Sequence record: LR756500.1
Direction: 5' to 3' (one strand)
Length of the DNA stretch: 64,000 bases
Shown here: piece after piece, positions 3,559 through 56,822 of the stretch
Numbering within the stretch: the first letter of the stretch is position 1
Layout: each line of letters starts with the position of its first letter
The notes under the pieces: generated by a model
Told to the model about the DNA's origin: nothing
The model's input: the letters and a program-made list of their open reading frames with translations, nothing else
Database searches by the model: none
Translations under genes and position numbers: made by a program

Positions 3559-3639
3559 TGGTGGAGGAAATGGGGTTCGAATCCCATGAAACCTCTTGAT
3601 TGCAAATCAAGTACTCTAGCCAGACTGAGCTATACCCCC
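3559..3639 (-). tRNA. tRNA-Ala(UGC)
   Basis: Anticodon arm CTTGA-TTTGCAA-TCAAG, G3:U70, encoded CCA. Confidence 0.9.
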
Positions 3640-3885: not shown

Positions 3886-4498
3886 AATAATTATTATTAT
3901 ATGTAAATATAATTAAAAAGAAATTAAAATAAAAATTTTTATAAAAATTAGTTAATTATATTCGATAATTGTTCTTGTTGTTGGTTTAACTTCATGCCAT
4001 ATTTGTTTTGCATTTACCATATCTTGTTTAATCCATGGAGAATCTCCTAATACGGCTTTAAAATATTTACCGCTAGATATTTCTTTAATAACATATTCAT
4101 GTTGAGTTGAATTTTTTGATTGATCGCTATCTATTATTTTTTCGCTTACTATTGTATAAAGTTTAATTTCATTTTTTGTATCATAAATACCTTCCTCATA
4201 CATTATAGATCGTATTTGTTCTTCCGTAAATGTTCTAGTTTCCATATTTAATTAATTTATGTTATACTTAATAGATTATGTAATTCCATTTGTAATTCTC
4301 GTCTACCCATTTGTTTTAAATAATAACCCATTTTTTCATATATTTCAATATCTGATAGATTTTGACCGTCTATAGCAAATCTTTGATTATTAATACCATC
4401 AAATACTACATAATCTTTATCTAATAAATCTTTAAATGAAGTTTTAGCATTAAAATTTAGACCAAGACTTACTCCTAATTTTATTATTTCGTTTGTTT

Positions 4499-5275
4499 TC
4501 ATTCGTACAATATTATTCCTTTATTTGAATCTAATATGGGATGATTTTCATTATCAAAAGCCCAGAAAGGAGCATGACTTAATAATTTACCATTTTCTTC
4601 TCCTGTAAAATTATGATTACAATTATGTAATAATCGTATTCTTTTTTCACTTGCATTTTTACACTGTTGTAAATATACATGAGAAATATATGTACCAACT
4701 ACTTCATCATTTTCTCCAATAATAATACTTAATTCGCCTTTAAAATCTTTATATGTTTCCATTATTTGTTTCATTTCAATATTACCAGATGGAGCACATA
4801 ATAATATTTTTTTAATTTCTTTATATCTATTAGCCATATAAGCAGCTACTGCTCCACCTGCAGAAGTACCAATTAAATAAATATTTGGATCTTTTTCTCC
4901 ACATATTTCAATAGAATTGTTTATACAATATTCAATAACTTCATGAGTTTTTGAAATTATATGAGAAGGATATAAATTTCTATTTAATGTATTATACATA
5001 GATCTCGGAACACTATTATTCATTCTAACAAATGAACCTAATTCTTTTGATACTATATAATCACCTAGTTTAATATATTTATTTTCATAACCTTCAGCAG
5101 TGCCACCGTAGCCTGGAATATTAATTATTATATTCTTTGAATTACATTCATGAATAAATATTTCAGAATTATTTAATTTTATCTGCATTTTCTTTAGAAT
5201 ATAAATATATTTGTTTATGTTCAAACCAAAATTGAGCCCATTGTTCTTTAGCTTCTTTTTTATTAAGTCCTTCAA
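4499..5275 (-). CDS. Alpha/beta hydrolase (true start probably internal)
   Basis: PGYGG oxyanion motif, GTSAGG nucleophile elbow, downstream D and H (GENDEVV, HNCNHNF). Confidence 0.65.
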   Translation of the reverse strand: MKDLIKKKLKNNGLNFGLNINKYIYILKKMQIKLNNSEIFIHECNSKNIIINIPGYGGTAEGYENKYIKLGDYIVSKELGSFVRMNNSVPRSMYNTLNRNLYPSHIISKTHEVIEYCINNSIEICGEKDPNIYLIGTSAGGAVAAYMANRYKEIKKILLCAPSGNIEMKQIMETYKDFKGELSIIIGENDEVVGTYISHVYLQQCKNASEKRIRLLHNCNHNFTGEENGKLLSHAPFWAFDNENHPILDSNKGIILYE

Positions 5276-5826
5276 TTAAAAATTTTTTAAGTCTTTTTTT
5301 CCATTTGCGAGGTTTTATTTTAAAAGTTTTCATTTAATAATAAAATTGCAGAATTATTATAATAGCCATCTCCTGTAAGTTTATAATTTTTATTATTGTA
5401 AGTAAATATTATCCAATAATCCCATTGATATCCATTACTATCAAAATTAATTAATATCTTGTCTAATGTATTAATGTAAGATATAATATCATTAGGTCTA
5501 ACATATAATAATTCTATTGTTTTTACTTTGCCTGATAAAACAGATTGAATATCTTCTTCCATCCATTTTATTACCTGTTTTTCAACATCTTTTTTATTCA
5601 TTATTTATTATTAAATAGTTCAATATCTTCATATCTAAAAGATTGACCACACAATGTACATCTATCTTGATCTATAATTTTAAATGTATTTACATCTCTT
5701 TGCATAAATAATATTCCCTCTTCACATTCTGGGCAAATAGATTTATAAATAGATTCATTACTATATCTTTTTAAATTCATGTATTTAATAATCTTTATAG
5801 GATTATTGATATTTATTGCAATTAAA

Positions 5827-6915
5827 TTATTCATATTTTAAAGATTTAATAAGTTTAGGATTTAATAAAATATATTGTAATAATTTTATTAAATCATCAA
5901 CATCATTTTTATGAACAGTTTCAACTGTAGTGTGCATATATCTCATCGCTAATTTTAATAAAGCAGTCGGTATTCCATGTGGATAAGCATATGAATCTGC
6001 ATTTGTTCCAGATCCTCTACCACTCGCAGTTAATTGATAAGGTATTTTATTTTCCTTTGCTGTATCAATTATTAATTTTAATAAATTCTTTTGAATTGAT
6101 GGAGCATTCATAATAACTAAACCTTTGCCCGCTGATACTGTACCTTGTTTACTTTTATTATATGCTGGGCTTTCAGTATCATGAGTTACATCTATGACTA
6201 TAGCTATATCAGGTTTAATTTTTTCAACAACCATTTGAGCGCCATGTAATCCTACTTCTTCCTGTACAGCATTAACTATAATTAATTCAAAAGGTAATTG
6301 AATTTTATTTTCATATAATTTTTTAATTAATTGTGAATTAACAAATCCTCCTATTTTATCATCTAGAGATCTACCACAATAATAATCTCCTAAATCCATA
6401 TAGCCATCAGACATTGTAATAGGAGTTCCAATTGTTATTCCTAATTTTTCAACATCTTCTTTTTTAGAAACTCCTATGTCTATAAAAATATTTTCTATTT
6501 TTAATTCGAATTTATCTTCTTGAACATGAATAGCAGGGTGACCAAAAACACCTTTAACTTTTCCATTGTCTCCCCATATATCAACTCTGGCTGATGGTGT
6601 AATTGTGATGTCAGAACCACCTAAACGTCCAACTTTTATAAATCCTTCATTTGTAATATCAAATACAAAAAAACCTATTTCATCACAATGAGCATCTAAT
6701 AAAACAGTTTTTATTTCTGATGTTTCTTTTAATGTTTTTAATGCTAAATTAGAAATATAATAAGCATATGCATTACCATAATTATCTATTTCAACTTTGT
6801 CAGCATATTTTTTAACATAATCTATCCATACTTTTTGACCTCCTAATAATAATTCGTATCCACTAGGAGATGGTGTATTAATATATTTTTTAAGAAATTC
6901 TTTTCTGTTTTTCAT
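5827..6915 (-). CDS. M42 family metallo-aminopeptidase (FrvX/YsdC-like)
   Basis: SPSGYE, AHCDEIG, LDDK, VQEEVGL, DVT, HT metal-binding motifs. Confidence 0.85.
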   Translation of the reverse strand: MKNRKEFLKKYINTPSPSGYELLLGGQKVWIDYVKKYADKVEIDNYGNAYAYYISNLALKTLKETSEIKTVLLDAHCDEIGFFVFDITNEGFIKVGRLGGSDITITPSARVDIWGDNGKVKGVFGHPAIHVQEDKFELKIENIFIDIGVSKKEDVEKLGITIGTPITMSDGYMDLGDYYCGRSLDDKIGGFVNSQLIKKLYENKIQLPFELIIVNAVQEEVGLHGAQMVVEKIKPDIAIVIDVTHDTESPAYNKSKQGTVSAGKGLVIMNAPSIQKNLLKLIIDTAKENKIPYQLTASGRGSGTNADSYAYPHGIPTALLKLAMRYMHTTVETVHKNDVDDLIKLLQYILLNPKLIKSLKYE

Positions 6916-7806
6916 ATTTTAATCGTTTAGCTTCATATTGTAATTTTTTAATACAACTATATTCATGCTTTAATATTTTTATTTCATTAAGCATAACTTT
7001 ATCGCAATATGAACATTTATAGGCTTTAACTATTATCATTTTTATATTAAAGCATTTAAAATTGTTAATTTATTATTAATTGTAAAATTTATCATTAAAA
7101 AGGAATTATTTTTAATTTTATTAATATCAATAATTTTTTCTATATAAGTAAAATTTTCATTTAATAAAACTTTTTCATTATTAAAAATATCAATATAACT
7201 AATATTTATATTTTTAATTCCATATATTTTTACTTTTATTTTTTTATTATATAAATTAATAACTTCTAAATATGTTTCTATGTTTATTAATTCATTTTTA
7301 TTTAAATCAATATTAAAAACATATGTTCTATAAATACCATTTTTATCTAATGTATTTAATATGATCTCAGTATTAGTTGTATCATTAAAAACATGAGTTA
7401 CTTTTGAATCATAATAAATAGATGATTCAAGTATCCAACGACAATATTCAAAATCATGATTTAAATTAATTTCAGTTATAATTAATTCATTTTTGTTAAT
7501 TTGATATTTAATAGATATATTTGCTAATAATGTAAAATTTATAACAAATAATAAGAATAGTAGAAAAATATTTTTCATATTAATTTTTTATAAATATAAT
7601 AAAAAAGTTAATAAAAAAAAAATTAAATCCACTTAATTGCTTTTTGAAGAAAATTTGGTTTTTCTTTTATTTTTCTAGCCAATTTTAATTGTTTGTCCAA
7701 TGGGATATTATTAATTATAGAAAGGATTAATTCTTGTATTTCTATAATTTCTTTTTTAGAATTACCATTAATTTCAATTTCAATTTTTTGAATCATAATT
7801 TAAATA

Positions 7807-8412
7807 TTAAATTGATTTAACTTCTTGTTTAAGTTTATTAATTTTATCTTTATTAATAGCTCCTTTTTTATTTATAGCAGGAGTTATATTTCCTTTTTTT
7901 GCTAATAAATCAGCTTGTACTTTAGCTAAATCTTCTTGCTTTTTATAATCTCTTAATTTATTTAATTCACTATTTTTAAGTGCACTTAATTCTTTTCTTA
8001 AAGATTCTTTTCTATTTAAATCTGTCTCATCTCTTAATAGAAATTCAATTTTTTTCTTTCTTTTTCTTATTGTTAAAAGTGTAGCTAATCCTCCAATTAA
8101 GGCTGCACCTGCAATTGCATAAGGTATATTGCTTTTTTTAAATATTACATCTGCTACTTTTCCTGCATCAATACCTTTTTTATGCAATGCTGCAGCTCCT
8201 ACAACTCCTGCTCCTGCTCCTAATGCCCATCCTGCTCCTGAAGCTGCTCCTTTTCCATATTCTTGACTAGTTGTAGTTTCATCAATGCCATCATCAATAT
8301 TTATCACTAAATTATATAATGTTTCATAATCTAAATTATTACATTCCTGATTAATACGTTCTTGTTCATTCCAATATTGTTGCCATTCATTGTAAGTATC
8401 GCAATATTTCAT
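7807..8412 (-). CDS. Gly/Ala-rich putative membrane protein with basic tail
   Basis: GAGWALGAGAGVVGAAAL and AIAGAALIGGLATLL segments. Confidence 0.4.
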   Translation of the reverse strand: MKYCDTYNEWQQYWNEQERINQECNNLDYETLYNLVINIDDGIDETTTSQEYGKGAASGAGWALGAGAGVVGAAALHKKGIDAGKVADVIFKKSNIPYAIAGAALIGGLATLLTIRKRKKKIEFLLRDETDLNRKESLRKELSALKNSELNKLRDYKKQEDLAKVQADLLAKKGNITPAINKKGAINKDKINKLKQEVKSI

Positions 8413-8542
8413 AAGTTTAATTTATTTTTTTATATATTTTAAATCTTATTGCTTAATTTATTTTAATACATTTCACCGGCCCTTTAACTGTAAATTTTAT
8501 ATTGGGTTTATATAATAAAGTTTCGAATGCTTACTGTTATTT

Positions 8543-10228
8543 TTATTTTTTATTAATTAAAAAAACTTGTGTTCCATTATTAACAACAATTCCAGCATTA
8601 GAATTGAAAACTTGTGACATTTCATCTACTAAATCACATTCATATTTTGCAATAGGATAAAAATCTTTTGCTCTTAAAAAGGTTAAATTATCATCTTCTG
8701 GTAAAATAATATAGCCATTATCTTTATTATAACCGAAATTTCTAAGATTATCATATGAATCATCAGATAATATTGCATCAAGTCCGTTTATAACAAATAA
8801 TGAAAACCTTTCTTTATCATCCTCGATAAAATGTGCTATACCAACATTACCTTTTTGATAAATATCTTTAAGAGGCAATGGAAAACTAACAGTATTTAAA
8901 ATATCATGCGATTGATAATAAATAAAATTTTTGCCATTTATTCTTTGGATTAATCCATTTAAATTTGAATATCCTTTTCCATATGTTGGAATAAGAGTTG
9001 TTTGAATATAATTATTTAAAATACCATCTAAATTTATTTGATATCTATTATCATTTGTTATTACTATCAAAGTATTATCTATTTGATAGTGAGTAATTAT
9101 TTCAGTTGGTTGAAATCCTTGTATAAGAATATTTTGTTTACGATTTAAATCAATTTTATAAAGTAATTTATCAATAAATATTATCACATTTTTATCTGTG
9201 GGAAATATTCCTCTAAAACCCGAGGGCTTACTTAGTGTATAAACCGGTTTAGCATGTCCCTTATATGTAAGGTCATATATATGGATATTTGCATCCTCTA
9301 AGATGCATCCGAATACATTACTACATGCCATATATTCTATATTTCCTTTAAAAATTTCTTTCATGACAAGTTCGCCTTTTGTAATACTAGTAGGCTTATG
9401 TGTTTTAATTTTTGTAATTATTTTAGTAGTAGGATTTAAATTTAATAAAAAGCGTTCTCCTTCATTAAATATTCTTTCAAATTGATTTAATAAGTTTTGA
9501 TCTGTTATAGGTTCATAACATTTAGGTATTTTTAAATTTGGATCATTTTTAAGTATGCTTAATTTATAAATCATTCTATCTTGAATATCTTTATATTTTT
9601 GATGTATACCTTTATATGGATGTACAGTTGTAATTAAATTAAATATTACAACTGCTAATGAAAAATAATCAGCATTTTTAGAAATTTCTCCATTATGATA
9701 AAAATCTCTAATATCATGTAAAAGTCTTCCCGAGTGTTTATTACCAGGTGTTTCATAGCTATCAACGTCTATAAATGCTATATCGCCATTTTTATGAGCT
9801 AATATATTAAATCCACTAAAATCACCAATCACGATGTTTAAAGAATGAATATAATTTAAACATGTAATTAATTTTTGAGACACAGATAATTTCCAAGATT
9901 CTGTTAAATTATTTCTTTGACAATAATTACTATTAAATGCTGAATGTAAAGGAAAAAAATCTGATGGAACCATATCCATTATAAATCCAATAATATCTTT
10001 ACTTGCTTGATGCGATATTAATAAAGCTTTAGGTTTTATAAATTCTTTTGCATTAATAGCATTAAGACTATTAAATTTTTGATCAGTAATCGGTTCAATT
10101 CCTTGAAGATATAATTTTGCAACTAAACCATGTCCAATTTCAATAATGCGGCCTTCACCACCTCTAGATAATTCTTTCTTTTCATCTATAGTAATTTTTT
10201 TACTAGATGCTTTATCATATACTATCAT
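8543..10228 (-). CDS. Ser/Thr protein kinase-like protein (TerY-triad kinase)
   Basis: RGGEG glycine loop, VAKLY, GDFSGFNIL catalytic loop, IDVDS, DYFSLAV. Confidence 0.75.
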   Translation of the reverse strand: MIVYDKASSKKITIDEKKELSRGGEGRIIEIGHGLVAKLYLQGIEPITDQKFNSLNAINAKEFIKPKALLISHQASKDIIGFIMDMVPSDFFPLHSAFNSNYCQRNNLTESWKLSVSQKLITCLNYIHSLNIVIGDFSGFNILAHKNGDIAFIDVDSYETPGNKHSGRLLHDIRDFYHNGEISKNADYFSLAVVIFNLITTVHPYKGIHQKYKDIQDRMIYKLSILKNDPNLKIPKCYEPITDQNLLNQFERIFNEGERFLLNLNPTTKIITKIKTHKPTSITKGELVMKEIFKGNIEYMACSNVFGCILEDANIHIYDLTYKGHAKPVYTLSKPSGFRGIFPTDKNVIIFIDKLLYKIDLNRKQNILIQGFQPTEIITHYQIDNTLIVITNDNRYQINLDGILNNYIQTTLIPTYGKGYSNLNGLIQRINGKNFIYYQSHDILNTVSFPLPLKDIYQKGNVGIAHFIEDDKERFSLFVINGLDAILSDDSYDNLRNFGYNKDNGYIILPEDDNLTFLRAKDFYPIAKYECDLVDEMSQVFNSNAGIVVNNGTQVFLINKK

Positions 10229-10980
10229 AATTCAATAATTGATTGTGATACATCATTTTGTAATATTAATCTAACAATAGATAAATCATCACTGGGATAA
10301 ATATTTTCTTTATTTTCTAAAATATTAAATTTTCTGGATAACATTACATCTAAATTTTCAAATTTTCTATCTATTAATAAAAAATCTAATATTTTTTTCT
10401 TATCTTCATCACTTAAAAAATGTCCATTTCTTTTTAATTGATCAATTCCATCTGATGTTATTGATATATCATTATAATTTGAAAATTTAATTTCATGTTT
10501 TATTTTGAAGAAATTATTTTGTAAATGATATGAAATATAATCAGGCGCATTATCTATTGGATCAACTCTTAATATTTCTGTACCATTATGAAATATTGAT
10601 CCATCCCCAATAATTATTCCATGAGCATCATTTCTTTTAATATCAGCTACAACCAATACAATAGTTGATAATATTTCATTTTCATTTAAATGTAAAAATT
10701 GACAAGTTTCTTTTAATTTAAGTTTAAAAGATTCTATTAATGAATTAGCAATAGATGAAGTGGTATTATAATCATATAAAAATTTTGTATAAGCTTGAAA
10801 TTCAGTCAACATTAATTTTGTAAATAAGGTTGATGCAAAATATGATTTTGTTCCTCCTGAACATCCATCGAATACTGCAATAAATACCCAATCTTTATAT
10901 TCAAAATATGTAAAATCATCTTCACAATGTAATGAATGAGACTCGCCTTTTCTTAAAAGAGTTTTAATACTATAATCCAT
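10225..10980 (-). CDS. PP2C-like protein phosphatase
   Basis: CEDD, AVFDGCS, IGDG, TSDG, DDLS motifs. Confidence 0.75.
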   Translation of the reverse strand: MDYSIKTLLRKGESHSLHCEDDFTYFEYKDWVFIAVFDGCSGGTKSYFASTLFTKLMLTEFQAYTKFLYDYNTTSSIANSLIESFKLKLKETCQFLHLNENEILSTIVLVVADIKRNDAHGIIIGDGSIFHNGTEILRVDPIDNAPDYISYHLQNNFFKIKHEIKFSNYNDISITSDGIDQLKRNGHFLSDEDKKKILDFLLIDRKFENLDVMLSRKFNILENKENIYPSDDLSIVRLILQNDVSQSIIEL

Positions 10981-11018
10981 TTGTTTAAAAAATAAAAGGG
11001 GCTTTAAGCCCCTTATTA

Positions 11019-11714
11019 TTAAAAGTTTGGTACAGAAATTGCTCCACTAGATGAAGCACTTGATACTGAAGAACTGATCCAGTTAATCATTTTACGTATA
11101 TCCTTAGCAGTTTGACCTACTCTTGCTACAAATTCTTTAGGAATTCCCATATTAGCAGCAGCTGATTCAAAATTTACTGAATCATTAATACCAAATAATA
11201 CAGTTGTAAAATTTCTATTAGTCTTTTCTTCTGCTGCTAATTTAGCATGTATTGCTTTAACTTTAGCAGCATCACCGGTAAGTGATGAATTATCTTCACC
11301 ATCTGTTAAAATAAATACTAAAGTTTTGCAATTAACACCGGAATTTTCAAGTTGATTTCTATAATTTAATGCATTTGTTAATCCTTTTTCTACTGCAGTA
11401 TAAAGTGCAGTTCCATAACCACTACCTTTAAATGTATCTAATTTTACATTTGCAATAGGTTGAAATCCAGATTTAACATTTACACTATCATTAAATTCAA
11501 CAATAGATACTAATAAACTATCTGCTATATGAGATTTTTGCATTTCTTCGGTAAAATCTTTAAGAGCAGAATTTAAATCATTTTCATAATCTGATATTGA
11601 AGGTGATATATCAACAATAAATACTGCATTTATTGTTTCATCAGCATCAATTGCATCAGGATTAAAATTTCCAAATTGATTACCAAATTGTACGTCATTA
11701 TAAAGTTCGTCCAT
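11019..11714 (-). CDS. vWA domain protein (TerY-like)
   Basis: DISPS MIDAS motif, GTALY, FILTDG; adjacent to PP2C and kinase. Confidence 0.75.
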   Translation of the reverse strand: MDELYNDVQFGNQFGNFNPDAIDADETINAVFIVDISPSISDYENDLNSALKDFTEEMQKSHIADSLLVSIVEFNDSVNVKSGFQPIANVKLDTFKGSGYGTALYTAVEKGLTNALNYRNQLENSGVNCKTLVFILTDGEDNSSLTGDAAKVKAIHAKLAAEEKTNRNFTTVLFGINDSVNFESAAANMGIPKEFVARVGQTAKDIRKMINWISSSVSSASSSGAISVPNF

Positions 11715-23292: not shown

Positions 23293-24186
23293 TTATGCTA
23301 TAAATACCTTTTCATTATTTTTAAATACTAATTTTCTTCCTTTAATCCAACCTTTATTTATCCATTCATAAACTTCTTCTTTTTTTACTCTTATAGATTT
23401 CTTCTCTTCTAAATTATGTATCCAACACTTTCCATACTGACTATTTCTTGAACCTAATTGAGATATTTTATTTGCTTTACTTATTTTTTCTCGATGCTCT
23501 TTAGCTAATTTACGTCCTATTTGAATTCCAACTAATTCACCTGATAAATATCTTGGATCATCTACATTTACCCAAAATTTATTTCCGTCTTTATCTTTTA
23601 CACTTGTTTTATGTTTCATTATTCCAACTAATTCACTACTTAAAACTCTAGAATCATTTAAACGACATCTAATAATANNNNNNNNNNNNNNNNNNNNNAA
23701 AGAAAAATATTTACTTTGATATTGATATTCACCTGATTTTAATTTTATATTATTTACATCACATTTAAAAGAATTTCCTTCTTTATCTATAACATTGACT
23801 TTTCCTATACTTATAGGGAAATATTCATTATTATATCTTGAATCACTTTTTAACATTAATGTTTTATTATTTTTTTTATCTTTAACTAATACCAATCCTT
23901 TAGTATTCCAACCATAACCACCTAACATAATATTATAAACATCTTTTCTTTTAACAAACTCTTCATTTACTAACTCAGCCTCTTTAGCAAACATCTCTTC
24001 AAATGTATCAAAATTATAAAGAACTATACGTTCAAAATTGTCTATTCCATACTTCTTAAATGCCTTATGCAAATAAGTACCTGATCCCATATAACCATCT
24101 TCCAACTTATCCGTCTGATGACAGCCTATATAAATTTTATTGTTAATTTTATTAATAATTTCATAAACTATATTATACTTACTCAT
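23293..24186 (-). CDS. GIY-YIG (Seg-like) homing endonuclease; contains a 21-N gap at 23678-23698
   Basis: NIVYEIINKINNKIYIGCH, YMGSG, YNIMLGG, repeated VKDK motifs. Confidence 0.8.
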   Translation of the reverse strand: MSKYNIVYEIINKINNKIYIGCHQTDKLEDGYMGSGTYLHKAFKKYGIDNFERIVLYNFDTFEEMFAKEAELVNEEFVKRKDVYNIMLGGYGWNTKGLVLVKDKKNNKTLMLKSDSRYNNEYFPISIGKVNVIDKEGNSFKCDVNNIKLKSGEYQYQSKYFSXXXXXXXXIIRCRLNDSRVLSSELVGIMKHKTSVKDKDGNKFWVNVDDPRYLSGELVGIQIGRKLAKEHREKISKANKISQLGSRNSQYGKCWIHNLEEKKSIRVKKEEVYEWINKGWIKGRKLVFKNNEKVFIA

Positions 24187-25285: not shown

Positions 25286-25369
25286 ATATTTATTTTCAAT
25301 GAACTAATATGTAAATATAATAAAAAAGTAATTAATAAAAAAATCCAGCATGTCAAAGAACCATTTAAA

Positions 25370-32141: not shown

Positions 32142-32511
32142 ATTTATTTTTTATGACTATCTGGAATTATATTATATGCTTTCATTTCAAAAGGATATAA
32201 CCCTATAAACTCCATTTCATTAGGAATACATTTTTGAATTTCAATTGCTTCATCATCATTATGGCATGCTGCTAAACATACTAATCTTATTGCTTCTGTT
32301 ATATCATCTTCTGATTTAACAATATCACTTAAATGTTTACCTAATAAAGTTTTTACAATTTCTTTTGCTTTAATTAATTCCATTTTCAAAATTTCAAATA
32401 ACATGTAAATTTAATAAATTAGTTTTAATTTAAAAAATTTAGTTTAAAAATATACCGGTTTAATGTAAGGAAGGGGTCTAAATAATAAAGATAACCGGTA
32501 TATTTTTAGAG

Positions 32512-32921
32512 TGGAGCTGCAGGGGTTTGAACCCTGGTCCGTCGAAAGAACTATTAAAATTTCTACATGCTTAGTAACTTTTATCTTTTAATTATTTTAA
32601 TGGTAAGTTACATCCTAATAAAATACTTAGTTGTTATTTTTCGATTAAATATTTCAACTTATATTTAACTTATTTAAGTTCAGTTATGCCATAAAATTAA
32701 AGTACTTAAAACACTTTAAAGTATGACAGCAAATTTAAATACCTAGTATTCAATTTTGCAAGAGTGACTATTAAACAGTACTACCCGTTAAGCTGCCATT
32801 CTCATTTCAGCATTGTTGCCATTTATTATTTGTTATTCATTTCTGTTTAAAGAGAAAAATAAACAAATTCTCTGCATGCTTAATTAACAATTTACTAACA
32901 CGTCAATTCCATGTCAGCCCC
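32512..32921 (-). ncRNA. ssrA: tmRNA; tag ORF 32788-32820 reads (A)GNNAEMRMAA*
   Basis: GGGGCTG/CAGCTCC acceptor with G3:U70, GGAATTGAC 5' motif, T arm, tag ending AA-stop. Confidence 0.92.
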
Positions 32922-32980
32922 CATATTTTCAAAGAACATTATTTAAACTAATATGTAAATATAATAAATTAGTTTAAAAT

Positions 32981-46369: not shown

Positions 46370-46506
46370 TGGCGGGGGAATTCGGGATCGAACCGAAACT
46401 GAATGTTTTCAACACATTTGCTCTACCAATTAAGCTTTTATACTGTAATAACTTAGAGTTTCTTTTCAGACTAATTTTAAAGTTATAGATGTAAATCTAT
46501 TCCCCC
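46370..46506 (-). tRNA. tRNA(UGA) in a class I body, interrupted by ~62-nt element (about 46436-46497) after position 9
   Basis: GGGGGAA-TA|insert|GCTT-AATTGGTA-GAGC-A-AATGT-GTTGAAA-ACATT; G73 plus CCA. Confidence 0.78.
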
Positions 46507-47721: not shown

Positions 47722-48591
47722 TTATATAGTAATAATATTTAAAATCCTATTAGTTTCTAGTGCAATTTTAGCTGTGTCTTGACCTCTAAATGATTCAGTA
47801 TAGCAATTATAAGCGTTTAAAGCAGATACTTGAAAATCATCCTTTTTATTATAAAGAATTAATTCAGGTCTAAATAAATAAGTATTCATTGAACTACTTA
47901 TAGTATCTAATTTATCGGTTTCAGATGAAATTAAATTTTGAGCTAATTTTCTAGCTAATGATATTTTCGATGTTTGCATTTCTTTTTTGCTTTCATCATA
48001 TATAAGACCTTTAACTATATCATGAAATGATACCATTTTTCCATTAAGATTAGATATAATTTCTAATTGTTTATCAATTATAATTCCAAATCTTTTTAAT
48101 TTATCACTAAATGATTCTATTTTTTTAGAAAGTGAATTATGAAAATGTTTTGATTTAATTGAAGCATTTTCTCCTGGAACAGCAGCAACCATTCCATTAG
48201 CACAAACTAATCTTAATAAACCAATATTAATTTGAAGAGATTTCATTCTATTTGATGAATTAAGTAAACTTAGCATTTTAAAATATTTTTCTCCATTAAC
48301 ATCTACTTCATCCCCAAATATTCTTAATTCTTGAATTCCTCTATTTATATCCATACGATATCTTACAGGTTTAAAATAATTATCTATTTTACTAACAATA
48401 CTTTTTGTGAAATCTGGAAAATCAAATGCATAATATCTAGTCGAAACTTCTTGTTCATGTACAAGTTTATCATAATAAAATGTAGAAACTAAATTATTTT
48501 TTTTATCAATTCTAAGATGATCTAAATTTTCAAAAATCTTTTTTTCATCAAAAGGTACTGCTGTCTTAATATAATCTGTAGCGAAACTCAT
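47722..48591 (-). CDS. DUF932-like protein
   Basis: LLNSSN...LQINIGLLRLVCANG. Confidence 0.5.
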   Translation of the reverse strand: MSFATDYIKTAVPFDEKKIFENLDHLRIDKKNNLVSTFYYDKLVHEQEVSTRYYAFDFPDFTKSIVSKIDNYFKPVRYRMDINRGIQELRIFGDEVDVNGEKYFKMLSLLNSSNRMKSLQINIGLLRLVCANGMVAAVPGENASIKSKHFHNSLSKKIESFSDKLKRFGIIIDKQLEIISNLNGKMVSFHDIVKGLIYDESKKEMQTSKISLARKLAQNLISSETDKLDTISSSMNTYLFRPELILYNKKDDFQVSALNAYNCYTESFRGQDTAKIALETNRILNIITI

Positions 48592-48652
48592 AACTAAATT
48601 TTTTAAATTTCTAATAAGTAAATATAATAAAAATGTTTTAATTAAAAATTTG

Positions 48653-48720
48653 TAGGACTAGTGGGAGCTGAACCCACGTTATCGGTTTTAGAGACCGATT
48701 TCTAACCACTAGATAGTCCC
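48653..48720 (-). tRNA. Amber suppressor tRNA(CUA) with tRNA-Pyl-like geometry
   Basis: GGGACTA / TCTA-GTGGT-TAGA / ATCGGT-CTCTAAA-ACCGAT / AAC / GTGGG-TTCAGCT-CCCAC / TAGTCCT-A; 68 nt. Confidence 0.8.
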
Positions 48721-48725
48721 CTTTG

Positions 48726-48909
48726 TGATTGTAGAAGGACTCGAACCAACAACCCCTCACTTTCAAATTACTGACAAAAATACTATTAAGCGTCCCTAAA
48801 TTCATTTTGTTTTTATTCTATTTATTATAAATATATCATCCACTTATGCGCTATAAGCTTATATACACCTACAATAAAAATAAGACTCTAACCATTGAGC
48901 TATACAACC
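48726..48909 (-). tRNA. tRNA gene with ~112-nt insertion in the anticodon loop; anticodon unresolved
   Basis: Acceptor GGTTGTA/TACAATC, intact D and T arms, stem CTTAT/GTGAG separated by about 48764-48875. Confidence 0.7.
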
Positions 48910-48946
48910 ATGTAAATATAATTAAAAAGATCGAAATATAAAAGGC

Positions 48947-49381
48947 TTATAAGCCTTTTATATTTTTATAGAATGTTCCTTTTTCATCTTTATAATCTTG
49001 TAATGCTAAATCTGCAGCATCTTTTAACTTTAGCCATTCTTTACGAAGCTTTTGAATTCTTTCATGCTGCTCAGATACTAATTTAACTCTTTCATCTGAT
49101 TTTAAAATCTCTTTAGCAACAAAATGAAATAATCTATTTATACTACCTAAACTATTAACAAATCTACATTTATTTAAAAATCTTTTAAGCCTTTTTCTAT
49201 CACATATTCCTAAATCAGTTATATGACTTTCTTTTACTTCTTGTAAAAGATCTTGTTTACCTTTAAAGGTATATACCTTTTTATCATCAATAATTGTGTT
49301 ATTTTGTAATTTTTCAATTTCATTTATTGTATTATAATATTCATTGAACAAATTTGCGTTGTGATCTACTATTTTTTCCAT
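48947..49381 (-). CDS. Hypothetical protein in the amber module
   Basis: ORF track; C-terminal coiled coil; no family recognised. Confidence 0.6.
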   Translation of the reverse strand: MEKIVDHNANLFNEYYNTINEIEKLQNNTIIDDKKVYTFKGKQDLLQEVKESHITDLGICDRKRLKRFLNKCRFVNSLGSINRLFHFVAKEILKSDERVKLVSEQHERIQKLRKEWLKLKDAADLALQDYKDEKGTFYKNIKGL

Positions 49382-49893: not shown

Positions 49894-50316
49894 TTATTTT
49901 TTTAATTTATTTTTAACTATTATTTTTAATAATTCATAATTTAAATCATTTGGATGTAATTCCATACAATTTTTCATAAAAAAACCAAAATATGATTGTT
50001 CTCCATATATATGTTTATTAAATTCTTCATTATTATTTTTAATAACGTTATTTACTAAATTAATAGTTTCTTCTTCTGATAAATATTTTGGAAGATATTT
50101 TTCAATTATACAAATTTCATTTATTGCTTGTATGGTTCCTATTGTTTCTAGATTACTTATTAATGTTCTTAGAATAAAGTTAACTTCATAATCTTTTAAT
50201 ATTTTATTAAATTGTCTATGAAACTCTCCAATAATTACTTTTAATATACTAATATATTCCTTATCTTTATTTTTGATAGCTATTTTTAAGTCATTTTTAA
50301 TTTTATTTTGAAGCAT
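49894..50316 (-). CDS. GatB/YqeY domain protein
   Basis: KIKNDLKIAIKNKDK...ILKVIIGE...EKYLPKYLSEEE. Confidence 0.65.
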   Translation of the reverse strand: MLQNKIKNDLKIAIKNKDKEYISILKVIIGEFHRQFNKILKDYEVNFILRTLISNLETIGTIQAINEICIIEKYLPKYLSEEETINLVNNVIKNNNEEFNKHIYGEQSYFGFFMKNCMELHPNDLNYELLKIIVKNKLKK

Positions 50317-50793: not shown

Positions 50794-51336
50794 TTAAGAT
50801 ATATCAATAATTAAATCTAATATTTCTTCTGCAGAATCTTCTATACTTAAAATATCAGTTCTTAATTCAAGATCTGGATCTTCTGGAGCTTCATATGGAG
50901 AATCTATTCCTGTAAAATCTTTTATTTTACCAGCTCTAACTTTTTTATAAAGTCCTTTAACATCTCTTCTTTCACATAATTCAATTGGAGCATTAACATA
51001 AATTTCTATAAAATTTTCTAAACCTATAATTTCTTTAGCTAAATCTCTAATTTCCTTAGTAGGACTAATAAAAGAAACTATTACATTTCTATTATTTAAT
51101 ATAAATAATTTTGCAATTTCGGCAACTCTTCTAATATTTTCTTTTCTATCATTATTAGTAAATCCTAAATCTTTATTTATACCAAGTCTTAAATCATCTC
51201 CATCAAGAATTATAATACCTGAATATTCTTTTTTTACCTGCTTTGCTATTGTTGTTTTACCAGCTCCAGATAATCCAGTTAACCAATATACTTTTTTCAT
51301 TGTTTTTAATTTATATATCGTATACTTCAGCGACAC
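50794..51336 (-). CDS. cysC: Adenylyl-sulfate kinase
   Basis: WLTGLSGAGKTT, LDGDDLR, DRKENIRR, RDVKGLY, FTGIDSPYEAP. Confidence 0.92.
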   Translation of the reverse strand: MSLKYTIYKLKTMKKVYWLTGLSGAGKTTIAKQVKKEYSGIIILDGDDLRLGINKDLGFTNNDRKENIRRVAEIAKLFILNNRNVIVSFISPTKEIRDLAKEIIGLENFIEIYVNAPIELCERRDVKGLYKKVRAGKIKDFTGIDSPYEAPEDPDLELRTDILSIEDSAEEILDLIIDIS

Positions 51337-51744: not shown

Positions 51745-52221
51745 TTATTTTATAAAATCATTACGTAATTGTGTTAATACTTTTCCTAATAAATTTTGAC
51801 CTGGCCATTTATTTTCTGGAATATTTACAGCATCTTCTTCTAATAATCCAATACCCCATATTTTATCATAAGGACTTGCTTCTACTAAAGTTCTAGTTTC
51901 AGTAGCAATTAATTGTTTTAATAGGTTTGGATTTTGTTCAAATTTTTCTTTATTAACATCATACATAAAATTATATGATATTTTACTCCATTTATCAGTA
52001 TCAAATCCTTTAACTTTTCTTCCTAATTTTTTATTTAAACTCGGATTAGGTTCATTTAAAATTTCATTTGCTGTTTTAGAATCATTAAAATAATTTGCTT
52101 TTTCCCACATAAAAGCTTGTTCACTATTTGAAAATTCTAAACTTTTATAATTAAATTTAACAGAATACCAATTGGAATATATTCCATTCCAAAAAAATAC
52201 ATACTTATCAGTTGTTATCAT
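51745..52221 (-). CDS. NADAR (YbiA-like) family protein
   Basis: YSNWY, SEQAFMWEKA, KKLGR, KFEQN, EASPYDKIWG, GQNLLGKVL. Confidence 0.9.
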   Translation of the reverse strand: MITTDKYVFFWNGIYSNWYSVKFNYKSLEFSNSEQAFMWEKANYFNDSKTANEILNEPNPSLNKKLGRKVKGFDTDKWSKISYNFMYDVNKEKFEQNPNLLKQLIATETRTLVEASPYDKIWGIGLLEEDAVNIPENKWPGQNLLGKVLTQLRNDFIK

Positions 52222-52243: not shown

Positions 52244-52314
52244 AGGGCCTAGAGGGATTCAAACCCCCGTAGTCAGCTTTGCAGGCTGCGACCTAATCAC
52301 TCGGACATAGGCCC
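52244..52314 (-). tRNA. tRNA-Cys(GCA)
   Basis: CAGC-CTGCAAA-GCTG, U73. Confidence 0.88.
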
Positions 52315-52321
52315 ATATCGT

Positions 52322-53278
52322 TTATCTATTAAAAAACTCTTTTTCGTTATAATACAACATACTTAATCTAGTAGCAAATGTTTTATCAGATGTACTATCT
52401 CCTATCATTATACATTGTTTAGGATCTAACATATATTTATATATTAGATCTATACCCATTCCACTTTGAGGTTTTCTACAATAACAAATTTCCTTAGGTA
52501 TACTATGAGGACAATATTTATAATCATCAATAATATTATTCATTAAAGAATTTGTTTCTTTAATTATATCTTCAACGTTATCTATAAAGTGACCTTTATT
52601 AACTCCTGATTGATTAGTTACTGCTAAAATTAAAAATCCTCTATTTTTATATTTTTGTAAAATGCTTACGGTATTTTCTAAAATATATTGATCATTTAAG
52701 TTAATTGGATATTTTTCTCCACTAACTGTTTTTCTAACAGTACCATCTAAATCAATTAATAATGCTTTATTTTTTAAATTAGTATCCCAAATTCTTTCAA
52801 ATTCTGTAATTACTAATTCATTATAATCTGTAACTTTAGGCTTTTTAAATTCTTTTGAATACTTAAATATTGCTGGAAGAACCCAAACATTTGGATTATT
52901 TTTAAATATAATAGGAATAGTATCTGTATAATTATGAAAGCTTCCTGTAATTTTTTTAATTCTAATATAAGAATTAATTAATGCATCTTCTTTAGAAGTA
53001 TTCATTAAATGAAATCCTATTGTGTGTTTATGATATTTACAATTATCTATAAATAAATATCTTGTATTTTCATTAGGAAGAGTTGCATCAATTACTATTT
53101 TCTTAACACCGTCTTTTATATGTTTTTCATGAAGTGCAGCTAAATCTATCATAGAAATATTTAAGCTATCTCTATTTAAAATTAAATATCCTAATTTTTC
53201 GTATTCTTTTGAAATACTAGATTTTCCACTTGCTGGATATCCTCCAATTAAAACAGTATCAGTATTACAAAGTTTCAT
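52322..53278 (-). CDS. Polynucleotide kinase/3'-phosphatase (P-loop kinase + HAD domain)
   Basis: GYPASGKS, VIDAT, LIDLDGT, TNQSG, CRKP, IGD. Confidence 0.75.
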   Translation of the reverse strand: MKLCNTDTVLIGGYPASGKSSISKEYEKLGYLILNRDSLNISMIDLAALHEKHIKDGVKKIVIDATLPNENTRYLFIDNCKYHKHTIGFHLMNTSKEDALINSYIRIKKITGSFHNYTDTIPIIFKNNPNVWVLPAIFKYSKEFKKPKVTDYNELVITEFERIWDTNLKNKALLIDLDGTVRKTVSGEKYPINLNDQYILENTVSILQKYKNRGFLILAVTNQSGVNKGHFIDNVEDIIKETNSLMNNIIDDYKYCPHSIPKEICYCRKPQSGMGIDLIYKYMLDPKQCIMIGDSTSDKTFATRLSMLYYNEKEFFNR

Positions 53279-56613: not shown

Positions 56614-56632
56614 ATTTACACCTAAACTTTTG

Positions 56633-56716
56633 TACTACGTATGGGATTCGAACCCATGAGTTGTTTCCAACACAACAGTGAAAGTGTTGCGACCTAAACC
56701 TCTAGTCGAACGTAGC
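56633..56716 (-). tRNA. tRNA-Glu(UUC) with long variable arm
   Basis: CAACA-CTTTCAC-TGTTG then GTTG-GAAA-CAAC. Confidence 0.85.
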
Positions 56717-56738
56717 ATTTAAATTTGGGTGGAAGATG

Positions 56739-56822
56739 GGTACCTGATAGGATTCGAACCTACGATGTTTCTAATGTATAGAGCCACAATCTATTGCCTT
56801 CGGCCGCTAGGCTACAGATACC
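56739..56822 (-). tRNA. tRNA-His(GUG) with 14-nt variable region
   Basis: G-1:C73, ATAGA-TTGTGGC-TCTAT. Confidence 0.88.

What the first reader, a model, noticed from the sequence alone, without database searches (positions are those of the whole stretch)
48653..48720. Amber suppressor tRNA with tRNA-Pyl-like architecture
68 nt with a 6-bp anticodon stem, CUCUAAA loop, 3-nt variable loop, 5-nt D loop and 0-1 nt acceptor-D connector. These are the established hallmarks of tRNA-Pyl, but no PylRS or pylBCD is in the window and the host is probably Bacteroidota. The charging enzyme and amino acid are unknown.
Basis: partly seen in the sequence, partly recalled or inferred. Interest (0 to 1): 0.75.

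Follow-up and report, generated by a model that had tools for sequence, protein, structure and literature searches.

The report
Shrunken amber-suppressor tRNA in huge phage
A 462-kb groundwater phage of Bacteroidetes carries a real but unusually compact tRNA gene that reads the UAG stop codon; its shape recalls pyrrolysine tRNA, but it is a glutamate-type tRNA that lost part of one arm, in a phage that does not itself use UAG as a sense codon.

Summary
At window 48653-48720 (minus strand) lies a 68-nt tRNA gene with anticodon CUA. Its lowest-energy fold has a 6-bp anticodon stem, a 3-nt variable loop, a 4-bp D stem with a 5-nt D loop, and no connector. It is not a tRNA-Pyl. It keeps GG in the D loop and UUC in the T loop. 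It has A73 and G1.U72 instead of G73 and G1:C72. No PylS or PylD is found in the phage genome, and no PylS in 401 Bacteroidota genomes. The window belongs to the published huge phage LR756500.1 (Rifle groundwater, Bacteroidetes host by CRISPR spacer). That phage uses the standard code: TAG ends 27 of 556 crude genes and is never read in frame. The D loop, connector, variable loop, G1 and A73 match a Bacteroidetes tRNA-Glu. Full-size relatives of this tRNA sit in TAG-recoded phages where TAG aligns with conserved Glu. One other compact relative (L245) keeps the mini D arm through a two-sided pair change. Best reading: a tRNA-Glu-derived amber suppressor with a truncated D arm, probably charged by a host synthetase (Glu or Gln). 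It would cause UAG read-through that this TAG-poor phage tolerates. Expression and charging are untested.

The parts
48653..48720 (-). tRNA(CUA) gene, 68 nt including discriminator A (48653). Acceptor 5' strand 48714-48720; compact D arm 48699-48713; anticodon stem-loop 48682-48698; anticodon CUA 48689-48691; variable region 48678-48681; T arm 48661-48677; acceptor 3' strand 48654-48660. No encoded CCA.
   Evidence: ARAGORN, Rfam 43.7 bits, MFE fold, covariance model R1, stem-pair check.
48912..48924 (-). One-mismatch copy (TAATTATATTTAC) of the phage's repeated promoter-like motif TTATTATATTTAC. It sits 3 nt upstream of the tRNA-like gene that directly precedes the CUA tRNA, and is the likely start of a two-RNA transcript (inferred).
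   Evidence: 22 copies in the window against 3.3 expected, 21 of them on the minus strand. The motif precedes ORFs, tRNA-Asn and the tmRNA.
48725..48909 (-). tRNA-like gene 4 nt upstream of the CUA tRNA. It has a good acceptor stem and D arm, a 112-nt insert where the anticodon loop should be, and a T stem with two U.U mismatches. ARAGORN's intron mode calls it tRNA-Stop(UUA). The anticodon depends on unknown splice sites, and Rfam does not detect the gene.
   Evidence: ARAGORN -i; fold, in which the insert forms a long hairpin, z = -2.7; Rfam E-value scan negative.
48934..48965 (-). Terminator-like hairpin plus T run that closes the upstream gene (48947-49381), so the tRNA pair forms its own unit.
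48618..48630 (-). Exact copy of the promoter-like motif directly after the CUA tRNA, serving the next gene (47722-48591). It marks the 3' limit of the tRNA unit.

Best explanation
This is a phage-encoded amber suppressor tRNA derived from a tRNA-Glu-type ancestor that lost the 5' strand of its D stem. What remains re-pairs into a 4-bp, 5-nt-loop mini D arm, and this gives the tRNA-Pyl-like (better: mt-tRNA-Ser(UCN)-like) outline.

Inferred steps:
- It is transcribed together with the preceding tRNA-like gene from a phage promoter motif.
- It is trimmed and given CCA by cellular enzymes.
- It is charged by a host synthetase. Most likely this is GluRS, as in its full-size relatives; otherwise GlnRS, which commonly accepts CUA anticodons.
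- It competes with RF1 at UAG.

The phage uses the standard code and ends only about 5% of its genes with TAG, with short in-frame tails behind them. It can therefore tolerate read-through. The benefit would be perturbation of host termination during take-over, or this is the 'suppressor acquired, code not yet changed' stage proposed for low-GC phages.

Shown: gene, fold, relatives, genetic code, absence of the Pyl machinery. Inferred: expression, charging, suppression, benefit.
For: Real gene with constrained structure:
- tRNA calls.
- All 17 pairs of the acceptor, anticodon and T stems are standard pairs in this tRNA and in three relatives.
- Differences between them are almost all two-sided. 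Ours against L245: 4 in the anticodon stem and 2 in the T stem. Ours against L287: 3 and 2 (alifold).

Compact D arm is conserved:
- L245:6687-6759, from a 92-kb phage contig, has U + GCUA/UAGC + loop GUGGU.
- The outer pair is G-C where ours has U-A.

tRNA-Glu origin:
- A Rifle Bacteroidetes MAG has tRNA-Glu(UUC) with U8C9, D loop UAGUGGUUAG (identical 10-mer), variable loop AAAC, G1 and A73.
- Its tRNA-Gln differs in all of these.
- tRNA-Glu is the best D-region match for ours, L245 and L101.

Full-size relatives work in recoded phages:
- L101 and L287 share G1.U72, A73, UC, CUAGUGGUUAG and a NAAC variable loop.
- They sit in TAG-recoded phages.
- There TAG aligns with Glu. Counts are E 8-22 against Q 0-3 per locus, while control loci give Q 7-17 against E 1-5.
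- Near-invariant Glu columns carry TAG in DUF5662 and in a SpoIID/NlpC protein.

The phage uses the standard code:
- Coding density is 0.9 or more under table 11 in blocks where one strand carries nearly all the genes, with no gain from TAG recoding.
- Stops are TAA 456, TGA 73, TAG 27.
- The median tail behind a TAG stop is 7 codons, as for TAA.
- There are only 6 TAG-bridged ORF pairs in the genome.

Expression signal: the promoter-like motif lies 3 nt upstream of the tRNA pair.

Literature:
- Suppressor tRNAs in standard-code, low-GC relatives are proposed as the step before recoding (bioRxiv 10.1101/2021.08.26.457843).
- The cultivated standard-code megaphage G also carries a suppressor tRNA (PMC12484599).
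Against: - No RNA data exist: there are no RNA runs among the holders, and laying reads was uninformative.
- The T loop has G at position 58, where A58 is nearly universal.
- The D-helix that E. coli GluRS uses for identity (established knowledge, Sekine et al. 1996, recalled from memory) is the very part that is missing, so charging with Glu is uncertain.
- Only one compact relative was found in IMG/VR, JGI metagenomes and GTDB genomes, using a strict 18-base pattern.
- Kinship with L101 and L287 rests on short shared blocks, not on a tree.
- Both compact copies sit in standard-code phages, so neither has a demonstrated decoding task.
- No RF2 gene accompanies the tRNA.
Confidence: 0.55

Rival explanations
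1. It is a decaying relic. A tRNA-Glu-type suppressor inherited from a recoded ancestor or acquired by transfer has lost part of its D arm and no longer works in translation. The tRNA-Pyl-like fold is a by-product of the deletion.
For: - Rfam aligns it as a normal tRNA with a 3-nt deletion in the D stem.
- G58 stands in the T loop.
- The phage has no in-frame TAG to decode.
- Its neighbour is a tRNA-like gene with a 112-nt insert and a mismatched T stem.
- A truncated tRNA-like piece lies at 46379-46439.
- Several other tRNAs of this phage have odd T loops.
Against: - All stems are intact.
- The mini D arm is shared with L245 and differs by a two-sided change at its outer pair, which argues for selection on the compact form.
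- A promoter-like motif stands in front of the unit.
- Compact D arms also occur on sense-codon tRNAs of other phages: L012 tRNA-Met with anticodon at position 30, and G001 tRNA-Trp at position 31.
Confidence: 0.25
2. It is a functional RNA that does not decode. It could be a tRNA-shaped decoy or sponge for a host tRNA-targeting defence or modification enzyme, or a processing or regulatory element of the tRNA belt.
For: - tRNA-repair-type genes lie nearby: a kinase plus HAD phosphatase at 52322-53278, and a GatB/YqeY-like tRNA-binding domain protein at 49894-50316.
- No decoding need is visible in the phage.
Against: - The anticodon loop is a textbook 7-nt loop, C32 U33 CUA A37 A38, identical to that of working suppressors in recoded phages.
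- Nothing specific points to a decoy role.
Confidence: 0.08
3. It is a true tRNA-Pyl, or the partner of an unknown PylRS-like enzyme, and inserts pyrrolysine or another non-canonical residue at UAG.
For: The outline matches: CUA anticodon, a possible 6-bp anticodon stem, a 3-nt variable loop, a 5-nt D loop and a 0-1 nt connector.
Against: - No PylS C-terminal domain at E <= 10 in the 429-kb record or in the complete 462-kb genome.
- No PylD.
- No PylS at E <= 1e-10 in 401 Bacteroidota genomes, while the Methanosarcina control rings.
- A73 and G1.U72 replace G73 and G1:C72.
- GG and UUC are present, and position 58 is G.
- The 6-bp stem and 3-nt loop are not conserved in relatives.
- No in-frame TAG in phage genes.
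Confidence: 0.02

Closest known systems
Phage-encoded amber suppressor tRNAs (tRNA-Sup-CUA) of stop-codon-recoded phages such as crAss-like, Lak and Agate phages
   Same: A phage-borne CUA tRNA in a low-GC phage of Bacteroidetes, presumably charged by a host synthetase. It lies in a tRNA-rich region.
   Different: - The carrier uses the standard code, has no in-frame TAG and has no RF2.
- The tRNA is Glu-type rather than the Gln-type reported so far: U1 in the Q-type loci examined here, G1 in this one.
- Its D arm is truncated.
tRNA-Pyl (pylT) of Methanosarcinaceae and Desulfitobacterium
   Same: CUA anticodon; loop CUCUAAA; a possible 6-bp anticodon stem; a 3-nt variable loop; a 5-nt D loop; at most one connector nucleotide.
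   Different: - It keeps G18G19-like GG and a U54-U55-C56-like UUC.
- It has A73 and G1.U72.
- It has G58.
- No PylRS or PylD is found in the phage, and no PylRS in the host phylum sampled.
- The features are not conserved in relatives.
Mammalian mitochondrial tRNA-Ser(UCN) (type I mt-tRNA)
   Same: The same compact outline while retaining the GG and T-Psi-C elbow motifs (PMC7609411). It is the better structural analogue.
   Different: Unrelated origin, different anticodon and amino acid; organellar translation.
Bacteroidetes tRNA-Glu(UUC)
   Same: U8C9, the D loop UAGUGGUUAG, a 4-nt NAAC variable loop, G1 and A73.
   Different: The anticodon is CUA, not UUC. D-stem nucleotides 10-12 and one 3' partner are missing. 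The first pair is G1.U72 instead of G1-C72.

Membership tests
tRNA-Pyl | CUA anticodon in a 7-nt loop with U33 and A37 | tested here: met
   Loop CUCUAAA.
tRNA-Pyl | 6-bp anticodon stem and 3-nt variable loop | tested here: inconclusive
   Possible here through A22-U40. The extra pair is absent in the relatives L245 (A.C), L101 and L287, whose variable regions are 4-5 nt. It can equally be read as a 26-44 pair plus a 4-nt variable region.
tRNA-Pyl | Small 5-nt D loop and at most one nucleotide between acceptor and D stems | tested here: met
   MFE fold. The same mini arm occurs in L245, with the outer pair changed on both sides.
tRNA-Pyl | Absence of G18G19 in the D loop and of T54-Psi55-C56 in the T loop | tested here: not met
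   The D loop is GUGGU and the T loop is UUCAGCU. Definition from PMC1851642.
tRNA-Pyl | PylRS identity elements G73 and G1:C72 | tested here: not met
   A73 and G1.U72. G73A gives about 100-fold loss in D. hafniense.
tRNA-Pyl | Co-occurrence with pylS (and pylBCD) in the genome or host | tested here: not met
   No PylS in the 429-kb or 462-kb genome. No PylD. No PylS in 401 Bacteroidota genomes. PylB, PylC and PylSn were not searched.
Suppressor tRNA of a stop-codon-recoded phage (code-15-type module) | In-frame TAG codons in phage genes, especially late genes | tested here: not met
Suppressor tRNA of a stop-codon-recoded phage (code-15-type module) | Phage-encoded CUA tRNA | tested here: met
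Suppressor tRNA of a stop-codon-recoded phage (code-15-type module) | Accompanying release factor 2 or dedicated synthetase (present in some such phages) | tested here: not met
   No RF1/RF2, no GlnRS/GluRS-like gene and no LysRS-like gene in the 429-kb record.
tRNA-Glu lineage | D loop, connector, variable loop, G1 and A73 as in host-phylum tRNA-Glu | tested here: met
tRNA-Glu lineage | Intact D helix 10-13:22-25 (a GluRS identity region in E. coli, recalled from memory) and a YUC anticodon | tested here: not met
   The 5' D-stem strand is missing. The anticodon is CUA.
tRNA-Glu lineage | Aminoacylation with glutamate | not testable with these tools
   Indirect only: TAG aligns with Glu in phages that carry the full-size relatives.

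The most novel reading that the evidence does not exclude
The compact CUA tRNA is an active member of a so far undescribed family of tRNA-Glu-derived amber suppressors. Its full-size relatives implement a TAG-to-glutamate code in a clade of phages, whereas only TAG-to-Gln has been reported. The mini-D-arm form in standard-code huge phages would be a deliberately weakened or re-targeted version used to manipulate host termination. It would also be a natural compact suppressor scaffold that needs no PylRS.
Probability: 0.3. Interest if true: 0.75.

Novelty: new variant of a known kind. Interest (0 to 1): 0.5.

Why it matters
Phage suppressor tRNAs are the levers by which phages switch genetic code, and why standard-code phages carry them is an open question. 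This case adds three things.

- It shows that a tRNA-Pyl-like outline can arise by a simple D-arm deletion in an ordinary tRNA lineage. Automatic 'tRNA-Pyl' labels and shape alone should therefore not be read as evidence for pyrrolysine.
- It links a huge standard-code phage to a Glu-type suppressor lineage, not the usual Gln type.
- The comparison set points to phages that appear to read TAG as glutamate. If confirmed, that would be a new phage code and would affect how such genomes are annotated: current pipelines translate these TAGs as Q.

A naturally compact suppressor that retains the elbow motifs may also interest people who engineer tRNAs.

Tried and rejected
- **Loose DNA pattern.** CTCTAAA-N14-TTCAGCT in IMG/VR gave 120 matches, none tRNA-like.
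- **Acceptor plus D-arm pattern.** GGACTA-N1-3-CTAGTGGTNAG gave 26 stretches: L245 plus 25 coding sequences.
- **Neighbour-protein search.** The search for related loci with the neighbouring AAA ATPase found no relatives.
- **Strict D-arm pattern.** In metagenome contigs it returned only the phage's own contig plus three non-tRNA chance matches. In GTDB genomes it returned nothing.
- **Whole-tRNA similarity to the phage's own tRNAs and to host tRNAs.** Not diagnostic. It is driven by the common CGGU/ACCG anticodon stem and the GUGGG T stem, so the top hits were Ser, Trp and Cys.
- **Model R1 in the Bacteroidetes MAG.** It passed only tRNA-Cys.
- **D-region lengths from the model-based alignment A3.** Unreliable, because the model clips acceptor stems. 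ARAGORN anticodon positions were used instead.
- **My variable-loop script.** It mis-scored long-arm tRNAs, so its counts were dropped.
- **Q residues in close DUF5662 homologues.** I first read these as evidence for Gln. One such protein (P0008) proved to be a TAG=Q translation by the gene caller, so only distant homologues and NCBI homologues were used.
- **Read-through candidates in this phage.** The two TAG stops with tails of about 100 codons are simply followed by the next gene, with ATG two codons after the stop.
- **Sequencing runs.** There are no RNA runs, and Logan contigs were too fragmentary.
- **Literature.** The first paper search was mis-set and returned only general phage papers. 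'tRNAPyl-like' occurs in no held paper.
- **Masked bases.** The run of N at 23678-23698 was left untouched.

Full report
**What is there**

ARAGORN finds 25 tRNA genes and a tmRNA in the window, all on the minus strand. One is a 69-nt call with anticodon CTA at 48652-48720. ARAGORN labels every CUA tRNA 'Pyl', so the label carries no information. Rfam's tRNA model scores the same place at 43.7 bits against a gathering score of 29.

The minimum-free-energy fold is -23.1 kcal/mol, with z = -3.2 against shuffles.
- acceptor GGGACUA/UAGUCCU with a G1.U72 wobble;
- no connector;
- D stem UCUA/UAGA with loop GUGGU;
- one A;
- anticodon stem AUCGGU/ACCGAU with loop CUCUAAA;
- variable loop AAC;
- T stem GUGGG/CCCAC with loop UUCAGCU;
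- discriminator A.

Rfam's alignment describes the same letters differently, as an ordinary tRNA with three nucleotides missing from the 5' strand of the D stem.

**Where it is**

The window is G000:324729-388728 of a 429-kb IMG/VR record, which is JGI contig Ga0209518_1000007. A window protein matches GenBank LR756500.1 (462,018 bp) at 100%. That record is GWB1_PHAGE_COMPLETE_CIR-CU-CL_25_34 from Rifle groundwater, described by Al-Shayeb et al. 2020 (PMC7162821, supplementary file 4).

The same supplementary table lists a CRISPR spacer from GWF2_Bacteroidetes_35_48 that matches the phage with one mismatch. Runs that hold the sequence are groundwater metagenomes.

The 31 kb present only in the complete genome hold no tRNA. 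The 361 nt around the tRNA are identical in the curated record.

**The phage's genetic code**

In every 20-kb block where one strand carries nearly all the genes, stop-to-stop ORFs of 80 aa or more cover about 0.8-0.96 of that strand under table 11. Reading TAG or TGA as sense adds almost nothing.

A crude set of 556 genes ends with TAA 456 times, TGA 73 times and TAG 27 times. In-frame tails behind TAG stops have a median of 7 codons, as behind TAA. The two long tails are simply the next gene, with ATG two codons after the stop. Only six TAG-bridged ORF pairs exist in 429 kb.

The phage therefore uses the standard code and has no visible need for a UAG decoder.

**Is it a tRNA-Pyl?**

The defining list in PMC1851642 and PMC7609411 has two groups of features.
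- Features compatible with this gene: a 6-bp anticodon stem, a 3-nt variable loop, one connector nucleotide, a 5-nt D loop.
- Features that fail here: absence of G18G19 and of T54-Psi55-C56 (GG and UUC are both present), and the identity elements G73 and G1:C72 (A73 and G1.U72 here). Position 58 is G, whereas A58 changes are strongly deleterious for D. hafniense tRNA-Pyl.

The Pyl machinery is also missing.
- No PylS C-terminal domain is found even at E <= 10, in the 429-kb record or in the 462-kb record. The same search rings in all control genomes.
- There is no PylD.
- Using a Rifle Bacteroidetes MAG as centre, no PylS was found at E <= 1e-10 in 401 Bacteroidota genomes, while Methanosarcina acetivorans rings.
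- The phage also lacks GlnRS/GluRS-like, LysRS-like and RF1/RF2-like genes.

Membership in tRNA-Pyl is rejected. [quoted passage not shown] That is the better structural analogue.

**Relatives**

A scan for the anticodon arm CGGTCTCTAAAACCG returned more than 100 phage CUA tRNAs. In those, the anticodon begins at position 32-40, never at 30 or 31.

The D-arm pattern CTAGTGGTTAG-N8-CTCTAAA found a single relative in IMG/VR. In JGI metagenomes it found only the phage's own contig, and in GTDB genomes nothing. The relative is L245:6687-6759, on a 92-kb contig that also uses the standard code. It reads:

GGACUAA U GCUA GUGGU UAGC AA CUUCU CUCUAAA AGAAG CGUCU AAGGG UUCGAUU CCCUU UUAGUCC U CCA

The two are each other's best match among 48 tRNAs. 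They share the 4-bp, 5-nt-loop mini D arm, whose outer pair is G-C in L245 and U-A here. They differ by four two-sided changes in the anticodon stem and two in the T stem. This argues that the compact form is maintained by selection.

A covariance model of the window tRNA scored L101:11387-11458 best, at 57.5 bits. The looser pattern with N9-11 added L287:5556-5630. Both are full-size tRNAs of the form:

GGCGGUR UC UUC UAGUGGUUAGGAA A ... NAAC ... UACCGCU A CCA

They share G1.U72, A73, U8C9, CUAGUGGUUAG and the NAAC variable loop with the window tRNA; L287's UAAC is identical to ours. The window tRNA looks like this type without UUC (positions 10-12) and without one G of the 3' strand.

Compact D arms are not tied to CUA. 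L012 has a tRNA-Met(CAU) with its anticodon at position 30, and the L245 contig has a tRNA-Trp with its anticodon at position 31.

**Which amino acid?**

Two lines point to the Glu/Gln pair, and more to Glu.

1. *Comparison with host-phylum tRNAs.* The Rifle Bacteroidetes MAG RIFCSPLOWO2_12_FULL_37_12 has this tRNA-Glu(UUC):

   GGCCCGU UC GUA UAGUGGUUAG UAC A UCACC CUUUCAC GGUGU AAAC ... A

   It has the identical 10-nt D loop, the same UC connector, a NAAC variable loop, G1 and A73. Its tRNA-Gln has U1, a UG connector and a different D loop. In D-region alignments tRNA-Glu ranks first for the window tRNA (narrowly), for L245, and for L101 (clearly).

2. *TAG in the phages that carry L101 and L287.* These phages are TAG-recoded: an ORF of 1242 aa appears with 10 in-frame TAGs, and coverage rises from 0.77 to 0.97.
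   - In an all-against-all comparison of TAG=X ORFs from about 120 loci, residues opposite TAG are mostly E. The counts are E22/Q3 of 38 for L284, E9/Q2 of 24 for L287, E8/Q0 of 14 for L101, and E20/Q1 of 54 for L099.
   - Control loci give mostly Q: Q17/E1 for L037, Q15/E5 for L092, Q13/E4 for L111, Q10/E3 for L049.
   - In DUF5662, 7 of 11 informative TAG columns are E-dominant in distant homologues, and three of them are E in 22 of 22.
   - In a SpoIID/NlpC protein, E is the top residue in 10 of 14 TAG columns, with 26/27, 25/27 and 22/26 in three of them, and no column has a Q majority.
   - One close homologue (P0008) had been translated with TAG=Q by the gene caller, so Q in such proteins is not evidence.

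These full-size relatives therefore probably insert Glu.

Whether the truncated window tRNA is still a GluRS substrate is open. The missing part is the D helix that E. coli GluRS uses for identity (recalled from memory). CUA anticodons are also commonly accepted by GlnRS, which is the assumption made for known phage suppressors.

**Expression signals**

The sequence just 3' of the tRNA recurs more than 20 times in the genome. Its core, TTATTATATTTAC, occurs 22 times in the window with at most one mismatch, against 3.3 expected, and 21 of these copies lie on the coding strand. It precedes ORFs, tRNA-Asn and the tmRNA.

A one-mismatch copy lies at 48912-48924, 3 nt upstream of a tRNA-like gene at 48725-48909. 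That gene ends 4 nt before the CUA tRNA. A terminator-like hairpin at 48965-48934 closes the gene upstream. The two RNAs thus look like one small transcription unit. This is inference; there are no RNA data.

**Most likely mechanism and rivals**

The best-supported reading (confidence 0.55) is a Glu-type amber suppressor with a truncated D arm. It would be transcribed from a phage promoter, matured and charged by host enzymes with Glu or Gln, and it would cause UAG read-through. A phage in which only 5% of genes end in TAG, with short tails behind them, can tolerate that.

This fits the route proposed by Borges et al.: low GC content, then TAG depletion, then acquisition of a suppressor, then recoding. 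It could also serve host take-over.

The rivals are:
- a decaying relic (0.25);
- a non-decoding tRNA-shaped RNA (0.08);
- a true tRNA-Pyl (0.02).

**Verdict**

The tRNA-Pyl interpretation is rejected as membership, though the resemblance in shape is accepted. The feature is a new variant of a known kind, namely phage suppressor tRNAs. The apparent TAG-to-Glu reading in related phages is the most interesting by-product, and it lies outside the window.

Noticed in passing
L101:4159-4665 and 7325-11053; L284:3001-3468 and 4490-6028; L287:3701-5243; L099: A group of TAG-recoded phage contigs appears to read TAG as glutamate rather than glutamine. They include IMGVR_UViG_3300021399_000108 and _000301, and ENA WILK20-1 scaffold_209. 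TAG sits at near-invariant Glu columns in two protein families, and codons opposite TAG in orthologues are mostly GAA or GAG. Control loci analysed the same way give Gln. Their suppressor tRNAs are tRNA-Glu-like. I found no report of this in the papers searched. Gene callers translate these TAGs as Q.
   Followed up: partly
window 48725-48909 (-): A tRNA-like gene directly upstream of the CUA tRNA carries a 112-nt insert in the anticodon region. ARAGORN's intron mode calls it tRNA-Stop(UUA), an ochre reader. The T stem has two U.U mismatches, the insert folds into a long hairpin, and Rfam does not see the gene. An ochre suppressor would be remarkable in a phage that ends 82% of its genes with TAA. 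The anticodon cannot be fixed without knowing the splice sites.
   Followed up: partly
window, 22 sites, e.g. 48618-48630, 32955-32967, 25311-25323 (-): A strongly over-represented motif, TTATTATATTTAC, is preceded by an A/T-rich block (consensus about ATTTTTAATTAAAACTTTTTTATTATATTTAC). It lies almost only on the coding strand, 10-45 nt before start codons, tRNA-Asn and the tmRNA. It is probably a phage-specific promoter.
   Followed up: partly
window 111-56821 (-); tmRNA 32509-32921: All tRNA genes of the 429-kb record lie in one 58-kb belt on one strand. Isoacceptors for most amino acids are present, together with a tmRNA whose tag is GNNAEMRMAA. No canonical tRNA-Ile is called; there are three CAU tRNAs and an ARAGORN intron-mode Ile(UAU) call at genome 348969-349109. 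Rfam adds a tRNA-Cys(GCA) at 52244-52314 and a truncated tRNA-like piece at 46379-46439, both missed by ARAGORN.
   Followed up: partly
window 56632-56716, 56738-56821, 3559-3639 (-): Several sense tRNAs are oddly long. tRNA-Glu is 85 nt, with an extra hairpin (GUUG GAAA CAAC) in the variable region. tRNA-His is 84 nt and tRNA-Ala is 81 nt. Several T loops depart from UUCRANY, for example in the Pro, Lys and Gly(GCC) tRNAs.
   Followed up: no
window 49894-50316, 50794-51336, 51745-52221, 52322-53278 (-): Genes next to the tRNA pair include a stand-alone GatB/YqeY-like tRNA-binding domain protein (phrog_1460, E 2e-13), an adenylyl-sulfate kinase (TIGR00455, E 2e-61), a NADAR-family protein, and a kinase plus HAD-phosphatase protein resembling polynucleotide kinase/phosphatase. 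A link between the YqeY-like protein and charging of the Glu/Gln-type suppressor is conceivable but untested.
   Followed up: no
L012:4683-4754; L245:4624-4693: Compact D arms (one connector, a 3-5 bp stem, a 3-5 nt loop) also occur on sense-codon tRNAs of other phages: a tRNA-Met(CAU) with its anticodon at position 30 and a tRNA-Trp(CCA) with its anticodon at position 31. Miniaturised D arms seem to be a recurrent trait of phage tRNAs.
   Followed up: partly
L029:55-122, L030:5179-5246, L054:2779-2846, L105:766-833: A CUA tRNA-like gene is shared by several large phage contigs. It has an 8-9 bp acceptor stem containing a G.U pair and a very short D region. ARAGORN finds no gene in L029. It recalls the 'allo-tRNA' shapes described from metagenomes (recalled from memory).
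   Followed up: no
L283:972-32019 (LR756500.1 166471-197518): The curated complete genome has about 31 kb that the IMG/VR and JGI contig lacks. This stretch is made largely of paralogues (78-84% identical) of genes elsewhere in the genome, which probably broke the automatic assembly.
   Followed up: partly
genome 176-208 kb (outside the window): Nine of the 27 TAG-terminated genes cluster in a 32-kb region with mixed strand orientation and lower coding density. This may be a module of different origin or timing.
   Followed up: no
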